The notes under the pieces were generated by a model, which saw only the letters and a list, made by a program, of their open reading frames with translations, was not told where the DNA came from and did not search any database. The position numbers were made by a program, and so were the translations under genes. 64,000 bases of DNA, from assembly GCF_006345805.1 (NCBI RefSeq), contig NC_042999.1:69316001-69380000 (forward strand). The letters run 5' to 3'. Below are positions 1,363 to 54,700 of this stretch, piece after piece. Positions within the stretch are counted from its first letter, which is position 1. Every line of letters starts with the position of its first letter. This stretch comes from Octopus sinensis. Its lineage: Eukaryota.

Positions 1363-1611
1363 ATTAGCACCATAAACCATATGAACTCCTTGATAAACAA
1401 TAAATTGGGAATATTCTCCAAGGTAAGTCAAGATATCAGTGACATGGGCCCCAGTTGGAAGGTTTCGTAACCGTATACAGTCGCGCTTGCGAGATGCAGA
1501 AATCATGTTGTGTGGTACCAAAGGCCCAGATGTTGGATGTGTAGCTATCAGTGGTGGAAGAGCAGTTTCCTGTTGTTCAGGGTTCCTTGGGTCCATGCTA
1601 CGGTTTAGCAC
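1363..1611 (-). CDS. ESRP: ESRP coding exon, linker plus RRM3 N-terminal part (gene continues beyond window start)
   Basis: ttgtag| acceptor, |gtgagt donor, 249 nt, phase 0 to 0: VLNRSMDPRNPEQQ...RDCIRLRNLPTGAHVTDILTYLGEYSQFIVYQGVHMVYGAN. Confidence 0.94.
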
Positions 1612-3786: not shown

Positions 3787-4002
3787 CTGCTGTACTTCGG
3801 CCATTGTGCTTTTGAACAGCTCGATGTAGCGTGTTCCCATCGTGTCTCGGTGTTTCTTAAGTGCCTTGGAAGCTTCTTCTTCTGAACTGAATAAAACAAA
3901 GGCATCTCCAGTCGATCGACCATCTGGATAATAAACAAACAGAATGCCTTCTTCTCCATCAAGGACATTGCAAGGATTAGGTTCTCGGGTAAAAAATTCC
4001 AG
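3787..4002 (-). CDS. ESRP: ESRP coding exon, RRM2
   Basis: ttcttgtag| acceptor, |gtaagc donor, 216 nt, phase 0 to 0: [72 protein letters not shown]. The ORF track shows the wrong frame here. Confidence 0.96.
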
Positions 4003-5139
4003 CTACAAGAAAAGAAGAAACAAAGGAGATTCAGAATATATTATAAAAAGGAAAATTAAAGGGTGTGGGGTAAAGAACAAAAGGAAGCCAGTCTGATTGT
4101 ATGAGTTAATGCTACAAGAAGCCCGCTTTCACCTGAAATTGTTAACACACTAGCACAGATCCAGGTTATTTAGAAAGTATATCTGCAACCATGTCAGCTT
4201 GTAAATGAAGAGTATATATTTAGAGGGGGCCGTTATTATTGTTGAACAAAACAAAACACCCTTGTAGTTTATTTCCAAGAAAGACAAGTATTAATCGATA
4301 AAAAACTAAAAGGATTATCAGAAACAGAAGAGAATATACCATTTTATTACATAGGACAATCGTATGTCTCAGAGAGGAGGCTTATAATGTTGAGGTCATT
4401 AAAGATAAGTTGTATAACAAGTTAATTCACTGAAGCTTCTGGAATTTTATGAGATGAAGAAATATAAACACTCTTTTCATGGTCCTTTTTCAGAAACAAA
4501 AAAAAAGGATGAATTTCCTCTCATTCTACTATTACAGACTTTATTCTAGATATTCCATCTCTATTATAAATATTTTTACATTCCTTGCCCTTTGGTGCGT
4601 TTCTATTTCTACACTCCTGTTAATGTACATTGCCTGCCTGCCTGCATTCATAAATACATACATACATAACCAGATTGAAGACCAAAATATTAAAAAAACA
4701 ACCAAAGTATTAAAAACAAAAGTAAAAAAGGTTCCAGACCATTTTGCAGCAATGGAAGGAAACGGAATTTAACTGACCCCTGCAGAAATCTGAATAATGA
4801 GACCAGCGTCAAATTTTCCTACTCTCTACATAGTTTCAGTTCTTTAGTTTATTTTAGACTTCCCAGTCAAGACCATGCTGGAACATCCCTCATTATTGTC
4901 TTACAAAATTATCACTTACACCTGATAAATTTTAATGAACTCCTGTGGCTAACAAACCCTTCATGATCAATAATTATGTAATTAATTATTTCTTACATAT
5001 ATTTTCTTAAATTTTGTTGAAAAAGAATAGAGCTGAGACTAGTAAATTCCTGTTTGTAAATTATTGAACTATTCTCAGTAAAAAAAAAAAAAGAGCAAGA
5101 AATGGTTTTATTCTGAATTTGCTGTTTGAAAAGTATCCG

Positions 5140-6075
5140 CTAAGTGACATAATTGATGTTTTGGTCGTATTACGATTTAATTAACTCGCTCTTTGACATA
5201 ACTAATCCTCTGGTCACATTATGACATAATTAGTTCATTAGTTACTCACTTAATATAATTGACCCTTTGGTTACACAGTGATATTAATTTACCCATTGAT
5301 CAGCCTACAGCTTAATTAATTTATTCCCTGTTTATAATGGTTATTCTTTGACATAACTCACTGATCACTCTAAGATGTAATTAAAACATTAAACACTCTA
5401 GATATGTTTAACCCATTAGTCACTCTTTGTCATAATTAACTCATTGGTTATTCTAAGACATAAATAACCCACTGGTAACTCTACAACATAACTACCCCAT
5501 TGGTAATGGTGCAATTATACACAATGACCACTCCTTGGTCATTCTATGCTGTAGTTAACCGATTGATCACACTATTATATTTATCCTATTTCGGAGCTAT
5601 AAGTTATCATTATTTATTTACTCTTACACTGTTATTTGTAGTAATAAACTGGTGAATTTCCAGGCAGTATTATATTTTTAACACTGTGGACACTGCCAGA
5701 TTGAATGGTACTGCCCAAGTATCAAAACCATAATGACATCTGTTTGGACAGCTGATGATGGGAATGCACATATGCAAGATTCTGAATTCATTATATCTTA
5801 GTCTTGTTATTCTGTGTTATTCTTCATTTTTGTAACCTAATTAAGCTTGGACAGTGCTTAGATTCTGGTGCCTAGTTTTGAGAAGTTCTGTGGTATACAG
5901 TTAGCTCAGTGGTCACTCTATAATTAGCCCACTAACCTAATTATCCACTGGTCACTATGGTGCAATTAACTCTCAATCATGCTATAGAATAGTTAACCCA
6001 TTCGTTACTACTCTTTGACATAATTAACCTCAGGACACACTGATATAATTAACGCCCTACTTACATTATGATTTG
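5140..6075. repeat. Degenerate tandem array, unit about 28 bp, in two blocks
   Basis: Consensus about GACATAATTAACCCATTGGTCACTCTA. Unit starts at 5195, 5223, about 5251, 5280, then 5374, 5401, 5429, 5457, 5485. Resumes at about 5900-6075. Confidence 0.7.
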
Positions 6076-7033
6076 CTTAATTGTTGAGTGATAGAAAAAT
6101 GGAAACAGTAAAAATATCAATTTTGACCAAACAGGCCAATATAAGTTCCTGTGAGTTATCAAAAGCTGATAGATCACAGTTCCAGCAGATATTGCCAATA
6201 AGGCTCAGTGTGTCAGAAGCTAAATACACTTCACTCGATATTGAATAAAGCATCAAGGAAACTTCACTATTCAATCTATCTGCAGTGATTTTAATATACT
6301 ACCAAAGTCTCAAACAAAGAAAAACGAAAGAATATTATAAAGAAAATAGTCCTCTGCTTAAAGAAATAGATATTTGCTGTATAAAAACATTTACCACTAC
6401 AAAAATAGCTGGTATCTATCTAAATTAGAAAAAAAAAGGTATTTATATAAGAAAAAGACAGGTATCTACATAACAAAAACAAGCACCTATGTATCAAAAG
6501 ATGGCTGTATTCCATATACAGAAGAGGTATCTATGTAAGGAAGAGATGTCTATATAAAAAGCAGAGTGTTTTCGTTCTCAAATGGGCAGAACAAGCAAAA
6601 ATTTGGTTAATAGATAAACCCACAACCTTTTAAATGAATTAGCAAAGAAGCAAAGGAATTCACTTGAAGATTAAAAGAACCCATTTTTAGTATCAGATCC
6701 TTAGCCTGGATGTGTGCTAGTATAAAATCCAACTAAATATTGGTAAAAAAAGTCAAAAAATAAGTAAATAAAAGACATGAAGTATTAAACACCATAGTCC
6801 CAAAACTACCACCGCCCGCACACCAATGAAACCGCGCCTCACTAATGTAGTAGAACTGGAGAAACTGGCATCAAACGGAACCTTGCAAATGGCCAAACAC
6901 AGTGTGACAATGTTAGCACAAACATTGATTATAAAAAGTTGACCATTTGTTGTGCCGGCACCGATACTGCCATAGGTAAAAAATCCGATCCACAGCCAGT
7001 TATACCTGATAATTCCTGACCCTATCCACTTAC

Positions 7034-7084
7034 CTGGGTGCAGTTTTAGCTTTACAATAGCTTAAGCTCAATTTAGTCAGGGCG
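7034..7084 (-). other. Candidate stop-containing (poison) cassette exon of ESRP
   Basis: Minus strand reads CTAAC branch point, ttttatgttcctttCAG|, 51 nt, then CAG|GTAAGT. Frame 0 gives CGC CCT GAC TAA. Confidence 0.6.
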
Positions 7085-8241
7085 CTGAAAGGAACATAAA
7101 ATAGTTAGATAATTAAGTGGTCGCCATTTTCAGTATTGTTGTCAATGGCATTAAACCAAAAGACAACTTTTGACATTACAAGATGCTTCCTACAAGTGAA
7201 GAAATCCATAACAATTCACTATTTTTCATAGTATATTCCATCTTTAGATGTTTTAGATTCCAATTCATTTATGTTCATTGAATTCTTCCACAGGTAGAGG
7301 AATCTGTTTCTTGGAGGTCAAAGTTTCAATGAAAATTCTTCAAGATTCAAAAGTGTCTTTTGTCTGATGAATCTATTGTTTTTCAGTTTTTTTTTTTTTT
7401 GGTATTTTCACTGTAAAATGCCGAACCAAATTCTAGACTTATCATGGGTTCATTTTTCTTTTTTCTTTCTTTCTCTTTCTTTTAATTTTTTTTATAATCT
7501 TTGTTGAATAAAATTTGATTGGACTAAAACAAATACTAATTCTCGTTAAAAAAAAATTAAGTATGCCAAGCTTTGGCAATTCTTTAGATGATAAAACAAA
7601 TAAAAAAAGAATTGGTAAATGTGAAAAATACAAAAAAGAAAAAGACAGATGTAAGTACCAGTACAGAAATGTTATAGTTTTTTTTGATATGATATTCTGA
7701 AAATAACCAAAGAATTAAATCTCCAAGACAATGAAAAACAGTGAATAGTCAAATCAAAACTAATCAAAGAGTGGTATAAAGAAGTTCTATTTTGGGATTG
7801 AAAGTTAAATTCTTTATTTTATGCATTTTATATTGCAAATGCTGAATAAGACCATTGTTGTTCATAGATTTCCAAAGACGAAAATTTCCTTGGAAATCTA
7901 ATTCCAGAGAGACAAACATCACTGGTCCATTAAGTAGAGTTACAAGACAAGGTATGTGGAACACAATGAGGTAAAATAAGTACAATGGGATATAAAGTAC
8001 CTGGATTTTCATTTGGAAGTACCTGTTGATCAATTTACTGCTCTCTCACATTATATATATATATGTGTGTGTATATATATGTATATGTATGTATATATAT
8101 GCAAATAAGTAACAAGGATGTCCAGGTCTGGACATTCTTGTTACTTATTTGCTTTTTATTCACCTAACTTTGAGCTGTGTGGACAATACCAGACTGACAT
8201 GGTGCCTCCACTTAAGTACCTAATTCAACTGAATCTTAATT

Positions 8242-8274
<33 letters not shown>

Positions 8275-9844
8275 TATATAATACTTTTGTGTGTATATAT
8301 ATATATACACACATAAATATGCATATATATACACACATACACACCCACATATATATATTTATATATACATACACATGCACACACACATATATACATATAT
8401 GTCCCCTAAATCCTTCTTCAGCCGAGTGAGCTTAATGTTGCAGGCGCTCATGGGTGCTGTCGCCACATATAAAGCACCTATGCTGATGCCGCATAAAAAA
8501 GTCATGCAGTCCACTCTGCAAAGTGGTTGCCATTAAGAAGAGCTTCCAGCCATAGAAACCATGTCAAAACAGACGGAGAGCCTGACCACTATGGAAAACA
8601 GACATTAAATGACAATGATGATGATGATGACCTACATCAAAATATATATACTTTCAGACACATACTTATGGACATACACACTCACATTCATACATACACA
8701 CATATACGCAAACATACACACATACATTCGAAAACTTAGGAAGGGCATCCAGCTGTAGAAACTTTGCCAGATCAGATTGGAGCCTGGTGAAGCCTACTGC
8801 CTTGCCAGCCCTCTATCAAACCGTCCAACCCATGCCAGCATGGAAAATGGACGTTAAACGACGACGATGAAGAAGACAATCTATCAATCCATCCACACAC
8901 ACACACAGACACATATATTCATCTATTCATTTGGTTAAATAATTGCCTTACTACCAATCTCAAGAAGCCAGAAAGAACATACCTAATCAAGTGATATACA
9001 GATACATGCAATCAAAAGCACTGTCAAAATGTGTAAAACATTCATAAAGTCCAGTATGCAATAAGATCTATGCTTGCTCCCCCCATATGTGCCTGTGCAC
9101 ATGCACTTAATACATGCATTATGAGCTTCCATCTCCTACATTCCAGTTACACTTTTTATCTCAACACCTTTGTCTTTCATTAATCAGTTACACTGAAGGG
9201 AGTTTGTCTCATTTCTCTCCAAACTCCACAAATCTCTGAAGAGCCATGTCACTCAACTAGGCAGCAGCACATTTTGTATATAATCATTGAACAATCGGTC
9301 CTTCACTTTGAAAGAGAGACCCTTGATGATTATAGTTCTGCACCAGAATCTTTCCTTGTTCTTACATTGCTTACATTTCCAGTGCTAAAGGGATCTCCCA
9401 AATAACAGAAGCTATCAACAACCTACTTCTAGAGGACTTTCTGACCATACGAATGAGGCTGGTGCCAGTGCCCCCTGATTGGCTCCCATGCCAGTGGCAC
9501 ATAAAAAGCACCATCTGAACTTGGCTGATGCCAGTACTCTCTGATTGGCTCCCATGCCAGTATCCCCGACTGACCCCCCCGTGCCGATGGCACATAAAAA
9601 GCACCATCCAAATGTGATCAATGCCAGGCCCGACTGACTGGTTCCTGTGCCGGTGGTACATAAAAAGTACCCACTACACTCTCGGAGTACTTGGTGTGAG
9701 GAAGGGCATCAAGCTGTAGAAATATTGTCTGATCAGATTGGAGCCTGGTGCAGCTGCTGGCTCTCCAGACCTCAGTCAAACTGTCCAACCCATGCCAACA
9801 TGGAAAATGGACATTAAACAATCATGATGACAATGGAGTTAATC

Positions 9845-10195
9845 TCACATGGATTCTTACTGTTTTCAACTCTTATGCATTTCTCATATCCGACGCCTAA
9901 CTTTATTGTCAACCTGTTTGTACTCCTTTGTGAGATGAAACTTTGCTATGATTACACTGTACGGAGTTCCTACCAACTCCTTTTCTGCATACTGAGTATA
10001 GCTACTGTCCTGTTTTCTTTCCAGCTAATTAAAATTTCAGCATTTGTTATGTTTCCTTTGAGACCTCTTAATTCTTGGTTTTGCTCCCAAATTTGGAACT
10101 TTCTTGCTAAATATTTGACTAATTCAACAAGAACAAGGTAATTGGCTTACAGGGGTATATACAGAGAACTGGTTGTAAATTCCCTTTTCATGGCA
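9845..10195 (-). mobile_element. Degenerate RTE-clade LINE fragment (end of RT plus Cys-rich segment)
   Basis: Reverse translation resembles ...YADDLVL...KFQIWEQNQELRGLK, with stops and frameshifts. Confidence 0.6.
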
Positions 10196-10689
10196 AGTGT
10201 TTGAGAAGACCTATCAGGCCAAGTAAAATCATAGCCACGGCAGATACCGGTGTAATGCAAATGGCACCCATGTCAATGGCACATAAAAGCACTCATTACA
10301 CTCTCGTTGACGTTAGGAAGGGCATCCAGCCATAAAAAAAAAAAACCTCAAATCAGACTGGAGTCTGGTGCAGCCTGCCAACTTGTCAGCCTTGCTCAAA
10401 CTCCCCGATCCATGCCAGCATGGACAATGGATACTAAATGATGATGATGATGATCAGTGGGGTAAAAATTGAACCTTAATGTACACCAACTTGTATCTTG
10501 AATTGCTTGCTGATCACACTCCTTTCACCAAGCTGATGGCCTGAAAACTCTCTGAACCCACTAGCAAAATTCAGAGTAGCATTAGACTGACTTGATATAT
10601 ATATATATATATAACTCCAAGAAAGTTAGAGATTGTGAATCCAACCCACTAAGAGATAATATCTATCTAATATACTGCTGGTAGAATGA

Positions 10690-10724
<35 letters not shown>

Positions 10725-13655
10725 TAGGGATGGTATTATTAAAATACCATCAGAAGTGGTAAGCGAATTATCAGCTGTACAGGCAAATTAATAAAATATA
10801 CACATACAATATTAGATATGTACATATATACACAAGGCTACTACATGAGTACCTATATCGCTAATGATAGAAGTCAAAAAATACTTCTGTACCACTGAAT
10901 AGTCACAAATCTATTACAGACTAGATAGGGAAATATATATATATCTTTTATCCTTTACTTTTTTCAGTCACAAGACTGTGGCCATGCTGGAGCACCACCT
11001 TGAAGAAGTTTTAGTTGAATGAATCAACCCCACTGCTAATTTTTTATTTTAAGCCTAATACTTATTCTATCAGTCCCTTTTGCTGAACCACTAAGTTACA
11101 GAGATGTAAATGCATGATCCCCGGTTGTCAAAAAGTGGTGGAGGACAAACAGAGACACAAAGACATACTCACACACACACACACATACAGTTTGTGTGTA
11201 CCAAATCCCTTAAAAAGTAAAATATGTACCTGTGTGACTAGCATAAAGTGTGTGTGTGTATATATATGTATGCATGTATATGTATATACATAAAAAGCAC
11301 CATCTGAATGTGGCTGATGCCAGTACCACCTTGACTGGCTTCTGAGCTGGTGGCACGTAAAAGGCAGCAACCAATAATGGTCGTTGCCAGCCTCCTCTGG
11401 CCCCTGTGCCGGTGGCACGTAAAAAGCACCCACTACACTCTCAGAGTGGTTGGCGTTAGGAAGGGCACCCAGCTGTAGAAACACTGCCAGATCAGACTGG
11501 AGTCTGATGCAGCCTCCTGGCTTCCCAGACCCCAGTCGAACCGTCCAACCCATGCCAGCAGAGAAAACCGACGTTAAACGATGATGATACATGTAGGCAT
11601 TGTAGGCAGATATCTAGGCTATAGAAGAAGACAATTGTCCAAGGTAACACACAATGGAACTGAACCTGGAACCACATGATATGAGTGCAAACTTCTTACT
11701 ACACAGCCACGCCTATATAAATTTACTTATTCAACTCTTCGCTACTTGATCAATGACTTCTGTTCTAAAATTAACACAGTTCAATATGGATTCCTAACTT
11801 ACATTGTTTAAATTGAATATAGTGTAGCAGGATTGCAGTTATTTCTAAACACCACAACATCATGCCACTCCACAAACTGTAAAATATTAAATAAGCTTAT
11901 AGAAAATGGGAATAATAGTCATGAGAATAGAAACTGCCTTTTTATGAGTCAACATAAGTAAAATGCATTGAATAGAATGTGAGTGCATGTGTGTGTGTAT
12001 GTGTATAGACAGAAATACAATTACGAGGTCAAATGCAATTATAAAGGTTCGTTCTCAGAGAAAAAAATTGTAAACGTGAGAAAAAAACATTGTATTGGAA
12101 TGCAGGTTAATGTTTAATTGTTTTCTTTAGCTCTTTCAAAAGGACATCTTTGTATTCTAAATAAGATGAAAAGATAGAGGGAGAAAAATAGAGAGAAAGA
12201 TGGATAGTTAGTGGGAGAAAGGTAGATAGATAGCGAGAGAAAGATAGATAGATGGTGAGAGAGAGGTGGGGGGAGATGTAGATAAAAAAATGAATTGGTG
12301 AAAGAAACAGAGTGAGGGTCATTTACTGGCCTCAATCATAGAACTGTAGGCAAGATGAAGTCCCATTTCAAGGTTTTAAGTCAATGATGTTGGTATATGT
12401 TCTTAAGCAAGGCTAGTGTTTGTGTTTATTGGTTTCTTTTTATCAAATTGCTTTGAATAATTGCCAAATGAGTTGTTTGCTTGAGTAATTAGTAACATAA
12501 AGCTCAGAGTAATGAATCTTAAAGCTACAATTTCTCATAAAACAAACAAGTTCTACCTTTTTGGTATAAAGCATTTATTTTCTTGTGAACACAAGAATTC
12601 ACCATACCACACACACACACACACACACACACACATTTGATCATCATCATCATCGTTCTGACATCCACTTTTCCTTGCATGCATGGGTTTGAGTTTATTG
12701 AAACAGATTTTCTACGACTGGATGCCCTTCCTGTCACCAACACTCATCTATATCATCATCATCATTGTCGTTTAATGTCCGCTTTCCATGCTTGCATAGG
12801 TTGGATGGTTTGACTGAGGACTGGTGGGTCAGAAGGCTGCACCAGGCTTCGATCTGATTTAGAAATGTTTCTACAGGTGGATGCCCTTCCTAACGCTAAC
12901 CACTACAAGAGTCTAGTGGGTGCTTTTACGTTTCACTTGCACGAGAGCCAGTCTGGCGGTTCTGGCAATAACTACGCTCATATGTTTTTCATGTGCTGTT
13001 AAGGTGACACTGGCAATGATCACGCTCGAATGGTGCTTTTTATGTGCTACTGGCACGGGAGCCAATCCGTGGCCATGGCAGCAATCATGCTTTGATGTGC
13101 TTTTAACATTCCACTGGCACGAATGCCAACCAGGCAATACTGTCATTGGCCACGTCAGCAAATTTGATTTTGTTTTCACTTGCCTCAATAGGTCTTTGCA
13201 AACAAAGTCTGTAATAAGTAATATTTCTTGATGGGCAAACATAATTTTGCAGAATATTGGAAATGAATGACACTGCTTGTATGACAGTGGACAATCATGT
13301 GACATCAAGGCACAACAACAATAACACACACACACAAAGGGCTTCTGTCAGTTTCCACCAACCAAATTCACTCCCAACACTTTGGTTGGGTCAGGGCTCC
13401 AGCAGAAAACTCTGGCACAAGGGGCCATACAGTGGCAAACTTCTTAACCACACAGCCATGTCTGTCTCTCAGCTCTCCATAAAAGAGAGGGTCAACCACA
13501 TTGTTCAGGGTTGAATCCCACTGCATGACACCTTGGGCAAGTGTCTTATAGCTCCAGGTTGACCAAAGCCTTGTGAATGGACTTGGTAGGCAGAAACTGA
13601 AAGAAGCTCGTAAATATATCATAACCATTATCATACTTTAATGTCCATTTTCCAG

Positions 13656-13692
<37 letters not shown>

Positions 13693-14044
13693 GCATGCAC
13701 GTGTGTGTGTTCCCCCATCACCGCTTGTCAAATAGTCTTGGTTTATTTACATCCTCATAACATGGTGATTCTGTAAAAGGTACCAATAGAATAAGTACCA
13801 AGGTTATAAAAAGAATAAAAAATTTAAGGCAGTACCCCAGTATGGCCACAGTCTAATGACTGAAACAAATAAAAGAAAAGAAAAGAGATAACAATGTTTA
13901 TAAATAATTTCAGACTTTCTGGAATGTCCTAGAACAAGTGGTTTGAAACTTTTATTCCAGTATACTTTGGTGTACCCTTGACAAAGAATATTGGGTATCA
14001 CAAAATAGACAAATAGTGGAAACCATAAAACAAACAATCTGTAA

Positions 14045-14306
14045 TTTGTAGTAAAGATTGTTTGCCAACATAACATGGCAGTGCTGGTTTAGGACGAATG
14101 TTGTTGTAGTTTAGCCCCAGGAGACGTCGTGTCCAGCTGGCTATATGGCATGATCTGTGTCCTTATATTTTCAAACAAGGGAATATAAGGACACAGGCTG
14201 TGTCATATAGCCAGCTGGAGATGATGTCTCCTGGGGCTAAATTACAGCAATATTTGTCCTAAACCAGGACTGCCATGTTATGTTGGCAAACAATCTTTAC
14301 TACAAA
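14045..14306. mobile_element. Hairpin (foldback) MITE
   Basis: Arms of about 125 bp: tttgtagtaaagattgtttgccaacataacatggcag... is inverted at ...ctgccatgttatgttggcaaacaatctttactacaaa, with a loop of about 11 nt. Confidence 0.8.
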
Positions 14307-14469
14307 ATACTGTTGCTGAATATCTCACCTTGTGAGATTTAGAAATAGTAATTTTCTTATCTGTAATTTGTTGTCAATTAATTATAATTAACTAGAAGTC
14401 ATGACTTCCAAACAAATCTCTTTATTAAAAATACTCTCTCTCTTTAGGTATCAAGTCCTAATGGGCAGT

Positions 14470-15050
14470 CATGTCCTGCTACAATTCCCTGTTCGTCAAG
14501 CTTGACATCCTTCTCCTTCCTCTGCTTCTTTTTCCAACAATATTTCTGATCATCGCTAAATTCTCCAGGCCTTCTTTCCTCATCACATAACCAAGAAATC
14601 TCTGTTGCTTGGCCTTTATCTCTTGAAGCAGTTTCCTACTTACTGCAACCTGGTTTGTCCATTACCATCCTCAATATTCCCCTTTTGAACCACATTTCCC
14701 AGCTCTCAAAGCCCCTTCTCATTTCTGACAGTATAGACTACACCTCACTTCCATACAAGGTAGACATAGCAGGTTAAAATACAGATTTTGATCTCGATGC
14801 TCAGACTACGGTTTCTCAAGAGGTTTTACAATTTTGAAAATGCAAATTTTGTCAGCACTATTTGTCTTTTGATTTCCATCACACATCTTCATCTTCTGGG
14901 ATGAGAGTTCCAAGGTAGTTAAAGGACAACACCAGCTTAATGGTTCAATTGTTCACTTTCAGCATGCACTTTGGGTTTCCCTTCTTTGTCACCACCATAC
15001 ACTCTCCCTCCTTGCCATATCAGTTGAAAAAATTTGGTTGTGACTATTTC
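14470..15050 (-). pseudogene. Degenerate RTE/BovB-like LINE ORF 3' fragment
   Basis: Reverse strand gives CMVVTKKGNPKCMLKV...FNYLGTLI...EIKRQI...KFAF...LLRNRSLSIEIK, a post-RT region typical of RTE elements, with many stops. Confidence 0.7.
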
Positions 15051-18000
15051 AAACTTCCAACATTTTTATAAATGTATATCTCAGTAATTTCACATGTATA
15101 CCTCTATATTTTCTCTGCCATTTATGTCTATGCCCTCGCATACTGTCTATCCCTGATGAGTCTCACCCCAACTCATCTTTCTAACATGCTCCCCCTCCAC
15201 CTGTGTTCATCACTCACTGCATGCTCCTCCTCCCTATCTCCCACTCTCATCAACCTACCTATTCACTCACTCTGTCCAATCTTCTGCACCGCCAACACAT
15301 ATTCATGACCAACATCTCTCTCTCTCTCTCTCCTCTTTCTCTCTCCTCTCTCTTTTTCTAATGGAGCAACCATGTATCACCTCTGCTGCAAGACACATGC
15401 TTCTGTCCCTCTATCATACATTAACTTCTCATCACCTGGTGTAAAGCCATCTCCCTCAATACTAACCCCACCTCTCACTACAATCAGCTGATGGGGTTCT
15501 TGTCTTGCAAGTTACTTGATGACCTTACAAGTGCTGGTCACACATAAAAGACCTAGCACATTCAGTAAAGTGGTTGGTGTTAGGAAGGGCATCCAGCCAT
15601 AGAAACCATGTGGATCTTCGCACAGGTCTTCAAAGGGGTCTCAGGAAGTAAGCATGCCTCCGTTCCTGAGCTAATTTTCCACTACATTTCTTAAAAATCA
15701 TGGTAGAAGCTTTGGTGTCAGGACCACTCATGTCTAGAAACTGAGGCTGGGGATAAGCAAGGGCATGCTCCCTGTAGAAAATCCAGCTCCAAAAAGACCT
15801 CATGATAGCAAAAGAGAATGGGCACCAGCCAGCCAGAAGGTTGGGGTGGGCTGCACCTGCCTATCTCAGTTGCTATGGCATTGAGGTTGTTCTGGCCACT
15901 TTTGTTAACGGGAACAAAACCCGGATTTAAAACACTGGATAATGATGATGATGACGACATAGTCCTCTACCTCACTGGCTGCTGTTGAGCCATCCAACCT
16001 ATGCCAGCATGGAAAACACTAAAATGTGATGATGACGATGACCCTTGTTTGAAAACTTTGTGAATCAAATAATCAATAGAAAAAAATACAGTTTGACTTC
16101 CTATAATGGTTTTCTCTCTAATGCTACCACGCAAACAACGATGGCAAATTACAAGAGGGCCATTACAAAATTACTTCTTAAAACCCATTTATTTTTTACC
16201 TGGCTGCATAATATTAAATATTTGTTTTATTAACCGAAGTGAAACAACGTGGGGAAGGGTGCAGAAACCTAGCAAAAGCAGAAGATAATAGGGGTTGTCA
16301 TCACCCTTAACCCCCCCCCCCCGAAGTATTCCCCCCACTCCTATCCCAAACGTCAGTTTATTGGGTTTTATTTCTTTCTTTGTTAATGTTTGTTTACAAG
16401 ACAGAGAAGTGCTTAATAAACAAAGAGAGGAATTTGGACAGCAAGTCTCATATTGACCCAGTGTCAACAGTAAAAGGGTGGTGGGTGGGAGGAGGGATGT
16501 GCATTAAGCCAGCCAACCAACCAAAGCAAATAAGGAGACTTGTGTTAATATTGCCTTTTTTCTCTCTGTCTCCCTCTGTCTCTCTCTCTGTCTCTCTCTC
16601 TCTCTTTCTTTCTCTCTCTTTCTCTCTCTCTCTCTCTTGTTCCCCAACCTTTAGACAAACAGAGTGTTTGTTGAAGTTTGAGTTTAAAGCAGGAAATAAC
16701 TACAGGAACCAAGAAGAGAATATTTTAGTGATGGTCACCAAAGGAATAAATAAATTGAAAAAACAAAAAACCCAGACATGTTTGAATTTTTAAGATTTTA
16801 TCAAGATCAACGTAACCGTTTTTTTGTGCCGACCAACTTTACAAGTAATCTTCTTGGATTTTAACTATTTTCTTTCATCTTTTCTCTTTTATCTTTTACT
16901 TGTTTCAGTCATTAGACTGTGACCATGCTGGGGCACTGCCATGGGGTATTTTAGTTGAACTAATTAACCCCAGTACTTATTTTCTTTTTAAGCTTAATGC
17001 TTATTCTATTGGTCTCTTTTGCCAAACTGCTAAGCTTGATCCTCACAGTCTTTTAACAACCGGTGTTGGTGTGTTTTCATCCCTGTAACTTAGAAAAACA
17101 AGTACCAGAGCCTATTCATTTGACTAAAAATTAGATTGTAGCCCCAGCATGGCCACAGTCTAAAGATTGAAACAAGTAAAAGATAAAAGATTTAAATATA
17201 ATGCCCTAGCTTGTTATATATTTAAATATAAGACATAGGCATAGGAGTGGCTGTGTGGTAAGAAGCTTACTTCCCATGGCTCCGGGTTCAGTCCCACTGA
17301 GTAACCAGAGCCTTGTGAGTGTACTTCATAGACAGAATCTGAAAGAAACCTGTTGTGTGTGTTTGTCCCCCCCACCATCATTTGACAACTGATGTTAGTG
17401 TGTTTCTGTCCCTGTAACTTAGCAGTTTGGCAAAAAGACTAATAGAATAAGTACTAGTCCTGGGGTCGATTTGTTTGACTAAAATTGTTGCTCCAGCATG
17501 GCTGCAGTCAAATGACTGAAGCAAGCCAAAGAATAGCCAGTCCGCCGTTGCTTTCGTAGTAAAAATAGATCTTGTTTTAAAAGAACACACAAAAGCTCTT
17601 AACCATTCCTTTATATTTTCTTGAGCAAATTATTCCAGCTTTGGAAAATACCAGCAACCAACAACTCTAACAAATTTCCTGCTTATTCTTTAGTTCAGAT
17701 CAAAATTGTATTTATACTATTTTATGGTTTAAAAAAACAAAAAAAATAAAAGCTTTGCAGAATATGTCTCATGTCCTTTGCTAAAAAAATAAAACACCGT
17801 GACAAATTGAAGAAGAAGGGAAAATGTGTTTTTCTGTCATTCTCACCTCAAAAGGCTTTGTTTGTTTGTTTTTATAAATATAAAATGGAAGATAGAAAAT
17901 ATAATAATTCCTTCAAAATTGCTAATAAAATTGCTATAAAGATTGTTCATCAAAGCGTAGGGTGAGTAATTAGAATATTAAGTTTATAAATGAGCCATTC

Positions 18001-18381
18001 AGTTCACCAAACCATATTAAATATAATGGTTGGCCATGATTATTCTGTAGCCAAACTGTAACAGGAATGAGGTGATCCTATTGGCCAACTGGTTTAATCA
18101 TTTAATTTGTGAGGTGACAAAATTAGGTCGTCTGAGTCCCTAATATAATATACAGAAGTATGTCTTCAGAATATTGCTGTCTTTTGTAGTACTGAGACAT
18201 AATGGCATTTAAGATACACATAAAAAAATGTCTTCTGCTGAAACAGACATCATCATCATCATTTAATGTCTGTATTTTACGTTGGAATATGTTGGATGGT
18301 TTGACAGGAGCTAACGAGCCAGATTTCTGTGTTGATCTCCAGTGTCTACATTAGCATGGTTTCTGTGGGTGGATGTCATTC

Positions 18382-18614
18382 TTAACCTATTAATGGCCAA
18401 TTTTTTTTATTTAATTTATTACCAAAAGTCTTTTTTTTTTATACAACTTTATCTGATACTAAATATATATAAAAAAATTTGATTACAATACTTGAAAGAC
18501 ACTCCAAACTTGATGACTAATTAAATATATCTCAGAAAAATACAGGTGTTACAGAAATATGATGGATTATCCTTCTGGTCCTAAAAAAAAGGACCATGGG
18601 TGCTAATGGGTTAA
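18382..18614. mobile_element. piggyBac-like MITE
   Basis: TTAA-CCTATTA...TAATGGG-TTAA, inserted into an RTE-tail repeat. Confidence 0.6.
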
Positions 18615-21600
18615 TGAAAGCCACTTCACAGTGTGTGCTGGATGCTTTTTTTGTGGCACTGGTGCTAATGAAGTTACCAAGTAACTCACAAGATACGACC
18701 CCTTAACAAAGTGGTGGGTGGCATGCAGTATAGAGGGAGATGGCTTTGTGCCAGGTGTTGAGAGGTTAAAGTATGATGGGGGCAGGTACAGGTGTCTTGC
18801 AGAAGAGGAGATACATGGCTACCCTAGTAGGAAAGGAAGAAAAGATGGTGGAGGTAAAGTGACAGACATATGGCTCAATGGTTAGGGTATATGGCTTGTG
18901 ATTATGAAGTCATGAGTTCAATTCCTAGTGGTGTGTTGTGTCCTTGAGCAAGATACTTTATTTCATGTTGCTCCAGTCCTCTCAGCCAGCAAAGATGAAT
19001 CTCCCTGAGAACTACATTAAGGGTGTGCATGTCTGTGGCATGCTCAGTCACATTGATTTCACGAGCAGGCTGTTCTGTTGATTGAATCAACTGGTAGATT
19101 CATCATAACCAATGGAGTGCCAAGCAATTGCAAGCATTGAGGACAGGTCTCTGATTTCAGGATCACTCCCTCCCACCAGGCTCTATAAAGGGTCATAGGT
19201 ATTTCCTTCCCTACTCACTCTTAGCAGAGGTTACAATGTGAAACCTAATGCTAACATACAACACAATTAGTCAGTGTGTAATATAAAACATGTCACACAA
19301 AGTAGCAGGTATTTGTGATACAAATCACATAACTGCACTGACTTAGTCTGTGGTACCACTTAAAGAGCTCAGTATTTAAATAAATTAATAAAATACTTGT
19401 AGATCATATAACTATAAGGTTTGTTTTACTGGAAGATGATTCATTGAAAATATTTGCTGTTAGAATTCTTTGAACAAAAACAAAGGAAGCAAGGCAGCAT
19501 TATTAATATTCAATTAGCAAACTGGGTTGTGGTATATTTGGTGTATTTGAGTGGCTGAGTATCTCCTCTATGTTAAGATAACTATCTCTGTCCCTTTATT
19601 ATATTTGAACCTCTCACCTGGCACACACCCACTTCCCTTAGTTTCACTTCCTCTCTTCAGCTGGCAGATCTTTGTCGTGTTAGATTCTTGGTGACCCCAG
19701 TGGTGCTGGTGCCACGTAAAAAGCACTCTGTGCCAGTGCTGTGTAAAAGGCACCCAAGTCATTGCCATGTTAAAAGCACTCATGCCAGTGTCACATAAGA
19801 AGCAGCCATACTAGTGCCACATATAAAGCAGCCAGCACATTCTGCAAAGTGGTTGACATTAGGAAGGGCATTCAGCCATAGAAACTATGCCAAAACAGAC
19901 AACTGAAGCCCAGTGCAGTTCTCCCGCTTGTCAGATCCTGTCAATCCATCCAACCCATGCCACAATGGAAAATGGACATTAATCACCACTGCCAATTGTG
20001 ACCAATTAATTACCTATACCTGTGTCTCCATCATACTATAACCTCTCATCAGCTGGCACAAAACCACCTCCCTCAATGCTATTCCCACTCTCAGCTGAGG
20101 AGCCTTGTCTTGTGAGTTACATGGAAACCTCACTGATGTTGGTGCCACGTAAAAAGTACCCAGTACACACTGTAAAGTGGTTGGCATTAAGAAGGGCATT
20201 CAGGCATAGAATGTAAGCCAAAACAGACACTGGAGATTGGTCCAGTCCTCTGGCTTGCCAGATCTTGTCCAACCAATGCTAGTATGAATATGGATGTTAA
20301 ATGATGATAGTGATAATGATGATGACAACACTCTTAATGATGAGAAATAAACAAGCATTAGCTTAATAATTAATTGTGGTCAAAATCTACAGAAGAAACA
20401 ACCCTAGAAGTTTAAATAATTAAAAACAGAATTCTGTAAGGAGTGTACTATATTTCTGGTCAGAGTAACAGTGTTTTAATCTTATGAGATCTCATCAGCA
20501 ACACATAGTATAACAATTGCTGCCAGATCCTGGTTTAATTGATTGACCAGCTCTACAACCCTCTGATCATGAACTGAACACTCTCACCACTGGGCCACAT
20601 CCTTCATACAAAGAAAATGTTACACAATTTCATTCTTGCAGCCTATGAATGTTTGGTTTTGGGACTCAGCAAGACCTGAATTAATCCCACCATTGTCTCC
20701 TTGACTTAAGAACAAAAAACAAAAAGGGAAAATGGAAGGTAATCACTGAACAACATTGCTCTTTCTTCATTATATAATTATTTCTAATTAGGCTTTTCAT
20801 TCTCCCTGAATTAAATATATTAACAGCAGACACAGGTGTGGCTGTGTGGTAAGAAGTTTGCTTCTTAATCACATGGTTCTGGATTCATTCCCAGTGTGTT
20901 GTAGCTTGGGCAGATGTGTACTACTATAGCCTATGCCGACCAAAGTCTTGTGAGTGGATTTGGGAGACAGAAACTGAAAGAAGCCTGTCGTGTATGTGTG
21001 GCTTTGTGTCTGTGTTTGTCTTCCACTACCGAATGACAACTGGTGCTGGTATGTTTACATCCCAATAACTTAGTGGTTCAGCAAACGGGATCAATTGAAT
21101 AAGTACTTGGGTCAATTCATTTGACTAAACATTCTTTCAAGGCAATGCCCCAGTATAGCCACAGTCTAATGACTAAACAAGTAAAACATCATCATCATCA
21201 TCACGATTATCATCATCATTATCATTTTATCATCCATCTTTCCATGTTTGTATGGGTCAAAAAGTGTTTATTAAAGCAAATTTTCCGTGGTTGAATGCCC
21301 TTCCTGTCACCAACCCTCGCCTTTTTCCAAGGAAGGTCAGGTATGTTTTCACAGAACATCAGAAACAAATGACATTTATTTACAGCAATCACATGATGTC
21401 AAGACAAGGAGACACAAGCACACACACACACGACAAGCTTCTTTCAGTTTATGCCAATCAAATCCACTCACAAGGCTTTGGTTGACCCAGGGCTATATAA
21501 GACGATGCTGAAAGTACTACACAGTGGGGCTGAACCTGAAGCCATGTAGTTAGGGAAAAAAATAATCTTAATCACACAGCCACAGACTATTCGATTTGCC

Positions 21601-22489
21601 AACATCAACAAAGGTAAATAATTCTGTAAATTTTATGGCAAGGACCGTGGAGATTATATTCCACTGATGAGATCACAATAATGCTGAAACATATTCACAA
21701 TTGTCTCCTATATTTGATGGAATAACCAAAATAATGTCATTGACTAATGTTGTTTTGTTTTCTTGTCACTGCATATTTATTTCTGCTAAGCATTTATTTA
21801 AATGTTAAAACTAACACAATTATTGAATTTTTCTGCTCTGCTTATCCAATATGTAAGGAATTCCATTTTCTTACAGAAATGCCATTTATGCATTTACTGA
21901 TTCATTCATAACTACCATGACCTCAGTGGTGTACATATTTCACTGATAAGGTCTCAGGAGGTGGAAACATGTTCACAGTTATGTTCCTTGCTTGCTTGAA
22001 AATGAAAATTCTATTAGTCATTGACTAATACACACAGGAGGGGCTGTGTGGTTAGTAGCTTGCATACCAACTACATGGTTCCGTGTTAAGTCTCACTGCA
22101 TGGCACCTTGGGCAAGTGTCTTCTACTATAGCCTCGGGTTGACCAAAGCCTTGTGAGTGGATTTGGTAGACGGAAACTGAAAGAAGCCCATCATATATAT
22201 GTATACATATATATGTGTGTGTGTATATGTTTGTGTATTTGTGTTTATCCCCCAACCCCACCCCAACATCACTTGACAACTGATGCTGGTGCGTTTGCAT
22301 CCCTGTAACTTAGTAGTTTGGCAAATGGAGACTGATAGAGTAAGTACTACGCTTACAAAGAATAAGTCCTGGGGTCGATTTGCTCAACTAAAGGTGGTGC
22401 TCCAGCATGGCCACAGTCAAAATGACTGAAATAAGTACAAGAATAAAAGAAGTTGCATGTATTGAATACCTGCCTATTCTTTGATACAT

Positions 22490-22770
22490 TCCATCTGCCC
22501 ATCCCTCCATTCATCTATTTCTCTATCACTCCATCCATCCACCCATTCACCCTTACAACCATCCCACCATCTCTCCATTCATCTATCCATCCAGCCCCCT
22601 CCCTCCTTCTTTCCATCCATCTTTTCAGCTCCCCCCACTCTCTCTCCATCCATTCATCCCTCTTTCCCTCCATCCATCCATCCATCCATTCATTCAGCAA
22701 CCACACCCCATTCTTTCTCTCTCTCTCTCTCTCTCCCCTTCTCTCTCCATCCATCCATCCACCTCCCTGC
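22490..22770. repeat. (TCCA)n / (CT)n microsatellite just downstream of the RRM2-start exon
   Basis: Direct reading of the sequence. Confidence 0.85.
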
Positions 22771-22906
22771 ATTTGTTTCTAGATAACATCTCAATGACCC
22801 TCCACACTTACATTAAATGTGTTTACCCTAACCCAATGACCAGCTGGGTTGACATTGGAGACAGCACAACAATAAAGGTATCAGAGTGGACATTCAGAGG
22901 ACTTAC

Positions 22907-23001
22907 CACTTGTTGTACAGTTGCCGTGAAAGGTAATCCACGCATTCGTATAATCACTTGTCCTCCTCTGGATAAAAATGCTTGAGCTTCAAGATTATTT
23001 C
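22907..23001 (-). CDS. ESRP: ESRP coding exon, start of RRM2
   Basis: tttgcag| acceptor, |gtaagt donor, 95 nt, phase 1 to 0: [31 protein letters not shown]. Confidence 0.96.
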
Positions 23002-24659: not shown

Positions 24660-24694
24660 CTACATAAGGAAAACAAATGATAATAATAATAATG

Positions 24695-24742
<48 letters not shown>

Positions 24743-25042
24743 TTCCTTTCTACTATATGCACAAGGCCTACAATTTGGGGGAAGGGGGTCAGTCGATCAC
24801 ATTGACCCCAGTGTTTTACTGGTACCTAATTTATTGACCCTGAAAGGCAAAGTCAACCTTGGCGGAATTTGAACACAGAATGTAGCAACAGGCGAAATGC
24901 CATAAAGCATTTCATCCAGTGTGCTAATGATTCTGCCAGCTTGCCGCCTTTAATAATAAAAGTAATTTTTAAAAATATTTTTAGTAAAATATCTAAGATA
25001 AAATTAAAAATAATAATAAATAAAAAGTAAAACAAAAAGTAA

Positions 25043-39771: not shown

Positions 39772-40270
39772 ACTTTGAACCAGTTACAGGTGTATATGCA
39801 TATTTCAAGAATTATTGTTCTTTCATCAGTTGGTACAGATGAAAGAGCAATCCATTAACTATCCACAAATGGATTGCTTAAATAGTTACTGAATACAGCA
39901 GTGCAACACTACTGCATAAATCAGTTTACATATTGAATACATTCCTGACAACTGGTATGTGTGTATTAATTGCTAGTTAGAACACAGAAACTGAATACTG
40001 TGTCCTTACTAACAATTAACACGTTGGCTCCCAAGCCTCATTTCACGTTTTATCCCAAAGTCCCAATACAATCATCATCATTTAACGTCTGTGTTCCATG
40101 CTAGTATGAGTGGGACAGTACCATAAGAGCCGGCCAGGCCAAAACCTGCACCAGACTTCTGTGACTGTTTTGACAGGATTTTTACAGCTGGATGCCCTTC
40201 CTAACACCAACCACTCAGCAGAGTGGACTTAGTGCCTTTTTATGTGGCACAAGCACAGGTGAGGTGATTA

Positions 40271-53477: not shown

Positions 53478-54074
53478 CACTTGCAAACATATACTTACAA
53501 AGCTTAACAATGACAAAGTTATTTCGGTAACATCATTATTATTTTCAAAATTAATTGAAATAAAGACAGCATGCTTCAAGAGAAATATGGTAACATGAGG
53601 GTTAAAACCCTGCAATGATTTTGGTCTCAAATTCCATCAAACACATTAAACTTCCAAGAAATTTAAAACAGTTTAAAACAGACCAAATTATTTGCTAAAA
53701 CACTTCCTTGGTTCCTATTATTGAAAATGAGCCCCATTTAGGTAGGGGGTGGGGATTCAAGTGAACACTACAAGCACACACACACATTCAGATGGCAACT
53801 AGTGTGGGTGTGAGAGAGTGGTGTATGTGTATAAGTGCCAACACCATTAGTATATGTGGGAACTAAAAGAGGACTTTTACGTAAAATATTGTTTTGTCAA
53901 GTTATAAATGAGGGATTCTTAACTGGAATCCATATGGCCCTTGAGGGTCCACATAAGATTTTGTTAAAATTTATATGCAATAAACTAGTTATACTCCTAC
54001 AATACACAAAATATACAAACATATATTTATCAAACGCCTGATATTTAATTATAAAAACAAAATGGGATTTTTAA

Positions 54075-54700
54075 ACTTCTGTGCTGGCGGCATGTAAAAA
54101 GCACTATCTGAATGTGGCCAATAACAGTACCCACTGACTGGCTCCCATGCTGGTGGCATGTAAAAAGCACTATCCGAATGTGATCAATGCCAGACCCGCC
54201 TGACTGGCCCCTGTGCCAGTAGCACATAAAAAGCACTATCCAAGCATTGCCGATGCCAGTACCCCATGACTGGCTCCCATGCTGGTGACATGTAAAAAGC
54301 ACTATCCATATGTGATCGATGTCAGTGCCCCCTGACTGGCTCCTGTGCTGGCAGCACATAAAAAGCATTATTTGAACATGGCCAATGACAGTACCCCCTG
54401 ACTGGCTCCCATGCTGGTGACATGTAAAAAGCACTATCGAAATATGACTGATGCTAGTGCCTCCTAACTGGCTCCTGTGCTGGTGGCATGTAAAAAGCAC
54501 TATCTGAACATTGCCAATGCCACTACCTGCTGATTGGCTCCCATGCTAGTGACATGTAAAAAGCACCATCTGAACATGATCGATGCCAGGCCCGCCTGAC
54601 TGGCTCCTGTACCAGTGGCACATAAAAAGCTCTATCCAAATGTGATCGATGCTAGGCTCACCTGACTGGCTCCTATGCTTGTGGCACATAAAAAGCACCC
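54075..54700 (+). repeat. 66-bp tandem array (about 9.5 units) inside an RTE-tail repeat
   Basis: The taaaaagc motif starts at 54095, 54161, 54227, 54293, 54359, 54425, 54491, 54557, 54623 and 54689. Confidence 0.9.

What the first reader, a model, noticed from the sequence alone, without database searches (positions are those of the whole stretch)
7034..7084. Candidate poison cassette exon splitting RRM2 of ESRP
Seen: in the 19-kb phase-0 intron between exons 22907-23001 and 3787-4002, the minus strand has a full set of exon signals. These are a CTAAC branch point (7104-7108, about 21 nt upstream), a pyrimidine tract ending CAG, 51 nt of exon, and a perfect CAG|GTAAGT donor. In the ESRP frame it reads R-P-D-stop (TAA 7075-7073) with two more in-frame TAAs, and at least two exon junctions lie downstream. 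The surrounding 400 bp lack the SINE and microsatellite sequence found elsewhere in the intron. Established: SR proteins, hnRNPs and PTB use such exons for NMD autoregulation. Inference: an ESRP feedback switch that I do not recall being described. One of the other reading frames is open, so a different splice partner is an alternative.
Basis: partly seen in the sequence, partly recalled or inferred. Interest (0 to 1): 0.85.

Follow-up and report, generated by a model that had tools for sequence, protein, structure and literature searches.

The report
Candidate poison exon inside ESRP gene
A 51-base stretch in a long intron of the ESRP splicing-regulator gene has all the signals of an exon that would stop the protein early, and the 490 bases after it are almost unchanged in a related species, so it is a credible but unproven self-limiting switch.

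Summary
On the minus strand there is CTAAC (7108-7104), a pyrimidine tract ending CAG, a 51-nt exon (7084-7034) and CAG|GTAAGT. It lies in the 18,904-nt phase-0 intron that splits RRM2 of ESRP, and it reads R-P-D-TAA in frame. It is single-copy in the window and carries the only CAGGTAAGT on either strand. A pair of sites this strong arose in 1.1% of 1000 shuffled introns. In-frame stops mean little, since about 69% of random 17-codon stretches have one.

The main new result is a contig from a related species (L039) that aligns to window 7032-5783. The 488 nt directly after the donor are about 96% identical, against about 80% for the next 760 nt (p = 9e-19). Frame-breaking indels show this conservation is non-coding. 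A conserved UGG/GGU-rich cluster lies 208-244 nt downstream, where ESRP-enhanced exons carry motifs.

Several things are missing. L039 starts 2 nt after the exon, so conservation of the exon itself is unseen. No transcript data could be reached. Distant relatives have short introns with no counterpart. I found no described ESRP poison exon.

Verdict: partly supported. It is a credible lineage-restricted poison-exon candidate, and ESRP feedback is untested.

The parts
22907..23001 (-). ESRP exon encoding the first half of RRM2 (...[20 protein letters not shown]). It ends in phase 0, with donor GTG|GTAAGT.
   Evidence: tblastn matches to ESRP fragments P0001-P0003. Acceptor score 13.9 and donor score 9.7.
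7104..7108 (-). CTAAC branch-point-like motif. The branch A at 7105 is 21 nt before the first exon base, and no AG lies between it and the acceptor.
   Evidence: CTAAC occurs 15 times in the 18.9-kb sense intron, so the chance of one in a 23-nt window is about 2%. The real exons of this gene show no CTRAY in the same window.
7085..7103 (-). Pyrimidine-rich tract and acceptor, TATTTTATGTTCCTTTCAG.
   Evidence: Acceptor score 9.9. Only 6 acceptors this strong lie in the sense intron.
7034..7084 (-). Candidate 51-nt cassette (poison) exon. In the ESRP frame it reads R P D * I E L K L L * S * N C T Q.
   Evidence: Single-copy in the window. GC is 43%, against 27-33% upstream.
7073..7075 (-). First in-frame stop (TAA). 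It lies more than 55 nt upstream of the 3787/1611 junction.
7028..7033 (-). Donor GTAAGT. With the exon's last three bases it forms CAGGTAAGT.
   Evidence: This 9-mer occurs once in the window, counting both strands. Positions 7032-7028 are identical in the related contig L039.
6545..7032 (-). Conserved non-coding block directly downstream of the donor. It has 15 substitutions and a few 1-2-nt indels in 488 nt against L039.
   Evidence: Every 100-nt window is 93-98% identical, against 57-89% for 6544-5783 (Fisher p = 9e-19). The indels break the 101-codon open frame. There is no Pfam hit, no Rfam hit and no unusual RNA fold (z = +0.61).
6790..6826 (-). UGG/GGU-rich cluster TTGGTGTGCGGGCGGTGGTAGTTTTGGGACTATGGTG, lying +208 to +244 from the donor. 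It contains GGUGGU at 6813-6808.
   Evidence: Positions 6826-6793 are identical in L039. The cluster lies within the first 250 nt of the downstream intron, the region where ESRP-enhanced exons carry motifs (PMC5703972, PMC4566030).
3787..4002 (-). ESRP exon encoding the second half of RRM2 (LEFFTREPN...STMAEVQQ).
1363..1611 (-). Next ESRP exon (linker plus the start of RRM3). It supplies further downstream exon junctions.

Best explanation
The 51-nt element is most likely a genuine alternative cassette exon of ESRP, restricted to this lineage. The roughly 490-nt conserved block after it is its splicing-control region.

Shown:
- The exon has a complete, strong set of splice signals.
- Including it between the two RRM2 exons puts a TAA four codons in, upstream of at least two further exon junctions.
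- The intron sequence starting at its donor is under strong purifying selection at the non-coding level.

Inferred:
- The exon is skipped by default.
- When it is included, the mRNA encodes only the N-terminal domain, RRM1 and half of RRM2, and is removed by nonsense-mediated decay. ESRP output therefore falls.
- Factors that bind the conserved GU-rich downstream block set the inclusion level.

ESRP itself is one candidate regulator, because its UGG/GGU motifs downstream of an exon promote inclusion. That would give negative feedback. This last step is the least supported.
For: - Splice signals are as strong as those of the real exons. The donor is the only CAGGTAAGT in 128 kb of both strands.
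- A pair at least this strong on both sites appears in 1.1% of 1000 shuffled introns.
- Among pairs not assigned to a mapped exon, it is the strongest on either strand.
- The sequence is single-copy and lies in a repeat-free 4-kb stretch.
- No competing strong splice site lies within 300 nt on the sense strand.
- The related contig L039 is collinear over 1.25 kb. The substitution rate is 3.1% in 7032-6545, against about 19% in 6544-5783.
- Indels of 1-2 nt rule out protein coding in the block.
- The block is G+T-rich on the sense strand, at the 96th percentile of the intron.
- A UGG/GGU cluster that is fully conserved at 6826-6793 lies at +208 to +244. This fits the published ESRP RNA map (PMC5703972, PMC4566030, PMC9550651).
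- AS-NMD through conserved poison exons is an established way for splicing factors to control their own level (PMC3967051, PMC13228269).
Against: - No RNA evidence of inclusion could be obtained.
- L039 starts at window 7032, so conservation of the exon, acceptor and branch point is unknown.
- The block as seen extends only downstream and has sharp edges, which also fits an enhancer-type conserved element.
- ESRP-motif enrichment is modest: no exact UGGUGG, and core 5-mers at only the 81st percentile.
- The exon has no obvious purine-rich enhancers.
- Distant relatives have short orthologous introns with no comparable exon.
- Comparable decoy pairs exist elsewhere in the window.
- The splice matrices are generic and not trained on this species.
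Confidence: 0.45

Rival explanations
1. The exon is a chance pseudo-exon that happens to abut, or lie inside, a conserved non-coding element with another function. The likeliest such function is a DNA-level enhancer of ESRP or of a neighbouring developmental gene. The splice-like signals would be unused, or used only as splicing noise.
For: - Decoy pairs that pass the real-exon thresholds occur about once per 10 kb per strand in this window. One antisense pair is only 1 bit weaker.
- By a looser criterion, 39% of shuffled introns contain a pair as good as typical real exons.
- Stops are expected in 69% of random 51-nt stretches.
- The conserved block is long, uniformly conserved and sharply bounded, like many enhancer-type elements.
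- No counterpart exists in more distant relatives.
- General knowledge: most intronic conserved elements in developmental genes are enhancers.
Against: - It needs a coincidence: the strongest non-annotated splice-site pair of the window sits exactly at the visible start of the one conserved block found.
- The strict shuffle probability for such a pair anywhere in the intron is 1.1%.
- The donor's intronic positions +2 to +6 are conserved.
- The block is strand-asymmetric (GU-rich on the sense strand). A DNA-level element does not need that.
Confidence: 0.35
2. The conserved block is itself transcribed as part of another RNA, and the 51-nt element is only its edge. Possibilities are a composite or alternative terminal exon of ESRP made by intronic polyadenylation, or an intronic non-coding RNA.
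For: - The conservation is non-coding and contiguous for 488 nt from the donor onward.
- There is a local GC rise at 6800-7100.
- Read through from the acceptor, the ESRP frame would end at the same TAA and give a truncated protein with a conserved 3' UTR.
Against: - No AATAAA or ATTAAA lies anywhere in 7300-6400.
- No Rfam family matches.
- Folding is no more stable than in shuffles (z = +0.61).
- A perfect U1-complementary donor at the start of a terminal exon would normally suppress polyadenylation (general knowledge).
Confidence: 0.1
3. Neither the exon nor the block has a function. The high identity would reflect local mutation-rate variation, gene conversion or an assembly artefact in the single short contig available.
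For: Only one related contig (L039, 1233 nt, from one sequencing run) supports the conservation. Its species and library type are unknown.
Against: A six-fold drop in substitution rate over 488 nt, with an abrupt boundary inside one collinear alignment (p = 9e-19), is hard to obtain without selection. The flanking 760 nt of the same contig diverge normally, so the contig is not contamination from the window's own species.
Confidence: 0.07

Closest known systems
Poison cassette exons of splicing-factor genes (SRSF3, TRA2B, hnRNP L exon 7, PTBP1/2 and others), used for AS-NMD auto- and cross-regulation
   Same: - It is a cassette exon inside an RNA-binding-protein gene.
- It carries in-frame stops upstream of further exon junctions.
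- It is flanked by unusually conserved non-coding sequence.
- Motifs for the encoded protein's own family lie nearby.
   Different: - No inclusion or NMD data exist.
- The exon is only 51 nt, whereas the classic SR-gene poison exons are several hundred nt and sit inside the conserved element.
- Conservation is shown between two related species only, and only on the downstream side.
- It is absent from more distant relatives, so it is not 'ultraconserved' in the vertebrate sense.
[quoted passage not shown]
   Same: In that system ESRP binds UGG motifs downstream of a splice site in its own pre-mRNA and shifts its own isoform output. Direct ESRP self-regulation by splicing therefore has a precedent.
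   Different: The mammalian event changes the nuclear-to-cytoplasmic isoform ratio near the C-terminus and does not involve a premature stop or NMD. The candidate here lies in RRM2, would abolish the protein, and is in an invertebrate gene.
Intronic pseudo-exons (decoy splice-site pairs) of long introns
   Same: It is a short stretch with consensus-like 3' and 5' splice sites in a long, repeat-expanded intron. It is full of stops, and no transcript evidence is known.
   Different: It ranks at the top of the window's decoy distribution. It has a perfect U1-complementary donor and a consensus branch point, and it abuts a strongly conserved block. Ordinary pseudo-exons show none of these.
Recursive-splicing sites and RS-exons of long introns
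   Same: It lies in a very long intron, is a cryptic exon with a strong 5' splice site, and would be 'poisonous' if retained.
   Different: The defining juxtaposition is missing. The acceptor is followed by CGCCCT, not GTRAGT, so no 5' splice site is rebuilt after the first step. The CAG|GTAAGT at the donor has no pyrimidine tract in front of it.

Membership tests
Poison (PTC-carrying) cassette exon, AS-NMD | An exon bounded by a usable 3' splice site (branch point, pyrimidine tract, AG) and a 5' splice site | tested here: met
   The scores fall within the range of the gene's real exons, there is CTAAC at -21, and no AG intervenes. This is a sequence-level test only and says nothing about use.
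Poison (PTC-carrying) cassette exon, AS-NMD | Inclusion introduces an in-frame stop more than 50-55 nt upstream of a downstream exon junction | tested here: met
   TAA at 7075-7073 is in the phase-0 frame, and junctions 3787/1611 and 1363/next lie downstream. The feature is weakly diagnostic, since about 69% of random 51-nt stretches here carry a stop.
Poison (PTC-carrying) cassette exon, AS-NMD | The inclusion isoform exists in RNA and is stabilised when NMD is blocked | not testable with these tools
   No transcript of this species or of a close relative was reachable. The protein searches found only relatives at 89% identity or less.
Poison (PTC-carrying) cassette exon, AS-NMD | The exon and its flanking intron are conserved above the neutral level | tested here: inconclusive
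   The downstream flank is conserved at about 96% against about 80%. The exon and upstream flank are not covered by L039. There is no conservation in distant relatives.
Autoregulatory poison exon (feedback by the encoded protein) | Binding motifs of the encoded protein sit at positions that promote inclusion | tested here: inconclusive
   One GGUGGU and a conserved UGG-rich cluster lie at +208 to +244. Density in the first 250 nt ranks at the 97th (TGG+GGT), 91st and 81st percentile of the intron, depending on the measure. There is no exact UGGUGG.
Autoregulatory poison exon (feedback by the encoded protein) | Inclusion responds to the level of the protein | not testable with these tools
   This needs a minigene, knock-down or CLIP experiment.
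Recursive splice site / RS-exon | A 3' splice-site AG directly followed by GTRAGT, so that a 5' splice site is regenerated | tested here: not met
   The acceptor context is TTTCAG|CGCCCT.
Composite terminal exon (intronic polyadenylation) | A polyadenylation signal downstream of the acceptor within the conserved stretch | tested here: not met
   No AATAAA or ATTAAA in 7300-6400. Only weak variants occur.
Repeat-derived (SINE/TE) exonisation | The sequence belongs to a multi-copy family | tested here: not met
   There is no second copy of 6600-7500 in the 64-kb window, although 41% of the window is self-similar repeat. Genome-wide copy number could not be tested.
Conserved non-coding element | A substitution rate well below that of the adjacent intron, without a conserved reading frame | tested here: met
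   15 substitutions in 488 nt against 134 in about 700 nt (Fisher p = 9e-19). Five indel events of 1-2 nt break the 101-codon frame.
Known structured RNA family (Rfam) | A match at the gathering score | tested here: not met
   No hits in the window at gathering scores. Only sub-threshold chance hits occur in 6000-8200.

The most novel reading that the evidence does not exclude
ESRP in this invertebrate lineage limits its own abundance through a short poison exon. ESRP protein would bind the conserved GU-rich block 200-250 nt downstream of the exon and drive inclusion. The resulting mRNA, with RRM2 interrupted, would be destroyed by NMD. This would be the first NMD-coupled feedback loop described for the ESRP family. 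It would also be an independently evolved analogue, with its own conserved element, of the ultraconserved poison exons of vertebrate SR genes.
Probability: 0.15. Interest if true: 0.7.

Novelty: new member of a known kind. Interest (0 to 1): 0.5.

Why it matters
ESRP is the master regulator of epithelial splicing programmes across animals. How its own level is set after transcription is largely unknown. The only self-regulation I found described is a choice between 5' splice sites in mammals that changes protein localisation (PMC9550651).

A conserved poison exon would add ESRP to the splicing factors that buffer their own dose through NMD. It would also show such a circuit arising independently in an invertebrate lineage whose introns have expanded greatly.

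Even if the exon proves to be a decoy, the 488-nt block is a sharply bounded conserved non-coding element in a key developmental gene and is worth a functional test.

Tried and rejected
1. Same-species or close-relative transcripts.
- Two protein searches with ESRP exons found nothing above 89% (RRM2b) or 75% (linker/RRM3a) identity.
- No hit ended at ...VQQVRPD.

2. Metagenome scan for relatives.
- It returned 36 loci at 85% amino-acid identity or less.
- Their orthologous introns show no similarity to the candidate and no strong pseudo-exon.
- This rejects deep conservation only.

3. Recovering the neighbouring contig of the L039 species.
- The P0142 cluster has a single member.
- A concatenated six-frame query of 6990-8050 hit the 8000-candidate ceiling and returned nothing, so it is uninformative.
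- Twenty exact ORF look-ups all failed.
- A 30-mer from the conserved block has no match in genome contigs or viral contigs.

4. Protein-coding reading of the 101-codon open frame 7058-6756.
- Rejected: no Pfam hit, and the frame is broken by indels between the two species.
- The two other hits to that ORF (P0143, P0144) are bacterial repeat proteins that match a low-complexity GxGTTxxQL stretch.

5. Other readings of the region.
- Nested gene or TE ORF in the intron: the ORFs of 90 aa or more are low-complexity or repeat-derived.
- ncRNA: Rfam, tRNA scan and fold z-score are all negative.
- Recursive splicing and intronic polyadenylation fail on their defining motifs.
- RBFOX (GCATG) and QKI (ACTAAY) sites are absent.

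6. This needs the phase-2 RRM1a exon to skip two constitutive exons and then leaves RRM2b out of frame, so I rejected it.

7. Identifying the organisms behind SRR11869385, SRR9969973 and the other accessions in the literature gave no hits.

Full report
**1. The observation**

The sequence runs ATCTAAC (CTAAC at 7108-7104), then TATTTTATGTTCCTTTCAG ending at 7085, then 51 nt (7084-7034), then GTAAGT (7033-7028).
- There is no AG between the CTAAC and the acceptor.
- The upstream exon 23001-22907 ends ...ACT GTA CAA CAA GTG|GTAAGT. The downstream exon 4002-3787 begins TAG|CTG GAA TTT TTT.
- Joined, they read ...[58 protein letters not shown]...[15 protein letters not shown]. This matches Pfam RRM_1 and ESRP fragments of other animals.
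- The intron is phase 0 and 18,904 nt long.
- With the 51 nt inserted, the frame reads R P D TAA, and two more in-frame TAAs follow.

**2. The gene**

- tblastn with ESRP fragments from other animals places the other exons on the minus strand.
  - RRM1a is at 26538-26428.
  - RRM1b is at 24659-24484.
  - The linker plus RRM3a is at 1611-1363.
- An N-terminal-domain exon lies near 60679-60545.
- The whole window therefore lies inside ESRP. Several exon junctions lie downstream of the candidate stop.

**3. Chance**

I scored splice sites with generic metazoan position matrices, taken from general knowledge and not trained on this species.

- The candidate scores acceptor 9.9 and donor 12.7. The five mapped real exons score 8.3-13.9 and 8.3-11.9.
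- CAGGTAAGT occurs once in the window, counting both strands.
- In 1000 dinucleotide-preserving shuffles of the intron:
  - a pair 25-300 nt apart, with both scores at least as high, appeared in 1.1%;
  - a pair with at least the same summed score appeared in 8.6%;
  - a pair with the candidate's acceptor score and a donor of 9 or more appeared in 39%.
- Empirically, the window holds about 11 other pairs that pass the weakest-real-exon thresholds.
  - Four are on the sense strand. Two of these, 52990-52784 and 52253-51979, were translated and are full of stops.
  - Seven are antisense. The best of them, 40177-40258, is only 1 bit weaker in sum.
- The candidate is therefore the top of a continuous decoy distribution. 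It is unusual but not unique.
- The 'poison' property adds nothing. At this composition a codon is a stop with probability 0.067, so 69% of random 17-codon stretches carry one.

**4. Repeats and other content**

- Self-comparison of the window shows that 41% of it, and 34% of this intron, is repeat. The stretch 4003-8040, which contains the candidate, has no second copy.
- The intron has no credible coding ORF.
- There is no Rfam family and no tRNA.

**5. Distant relatives**

- Neither the protein collection nor the metagenome scan holds this species or a close relative for the coding exons. The best matches are 86-89% amino-acid identity and 72-77% nucleotide identity.
- In those relatives the QQV|LEFF intron position and phase are conserved.
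- Their orthologous intron is short: about 2.5, 1.8, 1.25 and 0.9 kb in L003, L004, L005 and L002, and under 110 nt in several others.
- Only the two flanking exons align.
- The same matrices find no strong pseudo-exon in those introns.
- The candidate is therefore not an ancient feature of ESRP genes.

**6. A close relative, found indirectly**

- Next to the candidate there is a local GC rise (6800-7100) and a 101-codon open frame (7058-6756) that is not the ESRP frame.
- An exhaustive profile search with that frame found P0142, which is 89% identical.
- P0142 lies on one 1233-nt contig of sequencing run SRR11869385, stored here as L039.
- L039 is collinear with window 7032-5783 on the minus strand.
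- The alignment has two regimes.
  - From 7032 to about 6545, every 100-nt window is 93-98% identical.
  - From 6544 to 5783, identity is 57-89%.
- Counting substitutions only gives 15 in 488 nt against 134 in about 700 nt (Fisher p = 9e-19).
- The five indel events in the block are 1-2 nt long and break the open frame, so the constraint is not on a protein.
- L039 begins at the T of the donor GT. The donor's +2 to +6 positions and the 488 nt after them are therefore conserved, but the exon, acceptor and branch point are not covered.
- All attempts to reach the neighbouring contig failed. One search hit a candidate ceiling and is uninformative.

**7. What the block looks like**

- It has no canonical poly(A) signal, no GCATG and no ACTAAY.
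- It has no competing strong splice site.
- Its RNA fold is no more stable than shuffles (z = +0.61).
- It is G+T-rich on the sense strand, at 59.6%, the 96th percentile of intron windows.
- It contains the cluster TTGGTGTGCGGGCGGTGGTAGTTTTGGG at +208 onward. This cluster is identical in L039 and includes GGUGGU.
- The enrichment here is moderate, at the 97th, 91st or 81st percentile depending on the measure. There is no exact UGGUGG.

**8. Literature**

- Full-text searches found no description of an ESRP poison exon or of NMD-coupled ESRP feedback.
- ESRP is an epidermal marker in a squid (PMC9839350).

**9. Weighing**

- Before the L039 result I would have called this a good-looking pseudo-exon.
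- What changes the balance is that the strongest unassigned splice-site pair in the window coincides with the visible start of a sharply bounded block under about six-fold reduced substitution.
  - Under a chance-decoy model, the flank should be conserved only as often as conserved blocks cover the intron. That is probably a few per cent, which is my assumption and not a measurement.
  - Under a regulated-exon model, a conserved flank is expected.
- My probabilities are:
  - about 0.45 that it is a real, conserved cassette exon carrying a premature stop;
  - about 0.35 that it is a decoy abutting an element with another function, such as an enhancer;
  - about 0.1 that the block belongs to another transcript;
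  - the remainder that nothing here is functional.
- ESRP self-feedback specifically is about 0.15.

**10. Limits**

- The conservation rests on one short contig from a species and library type I could not identify.
- The splice matrices are generic.
- No RNA data were reachable.

Noticed in passing
L039:1-1233 versus window 7032-5783: The only related contig begins exactly at position +2 of the predicted donor (TAAGTGG...). Its first 30 nt are orthologous and not repeat, so the break is not a repeat boundary. It could be chance, low coverage, or a heterozygous variant at the donor G in that species.
   Followed up: partly
L039:1207-1233; window 17233-17259 and about 5783: The last 27 nt of L039 match a window repeat at 17233-17259. 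The relative therefore seems to carry a repeat insertion at the point orthologous to about 5783, which the window lacks.
   Followed up: no
window 22531-22806 (minus strand): The densest UGG/GGU stretch of the whole intron lies 100-350 nt downstream of the constitutive RRM2a exon. It includes a (TCCA)n/(TGGA)n microsatellite at 22645-22689. It sits where ESRP-type motifs would enhance the upstream exon, but it is low-complexity sequence.
   Followed up: partly
window 11128-11592, 54045-54500, 61612-62007 and many others: A SINE-like repeat family gives spurious ORFs with recurring ...LQSDLA.FL.L.ALPNANHSESVVGAFYV... and ...HGSQSGGT... translations. About 41% of the window is self-similar repeat.
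   Followed up: partly
window 24680-24745 (minus strand): A long (ATT)n microsatellite sits directly in front of the pyrimidine tract and acceptor of the RRM1b exon (24659). That exon has the weakest acceptor score of the mapped exons (8.3).
   Followed up: no
window 40177-40258 (plus strand): An antisense decoy pair (82 nt, acceptor 8.9, donor 12.7) is nearly as strong as the candidate. It is either a useful negative control or an unannotated antisense exon.
   Followed up: no
window 7058-6756 (minus strand): A 101-codon open frame in AT-rich intron has no Pfam match, and 1-2-nt indels break it in the relative. It is an accident of the GC-richer conserved block and not a gene.
   Followed up: yes
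L002-L037 versus window 22906-4003: The RRM2-splitting intron keeps its position and phase across many animals, but its length ranges from about 50 nt to 2.5 kb in the relatives found, against 18.9 kb here. The expansion in this lineage is largely repeats in 8041-22453.
   Followed up: partly
window 18055-17847 and 15746-15472 (minus strand): Two further sense-strand pseudo-exons lie in the same intron (209 and 275 nt, summed scores about 19). Both are full of stops.
   Followed up: partly
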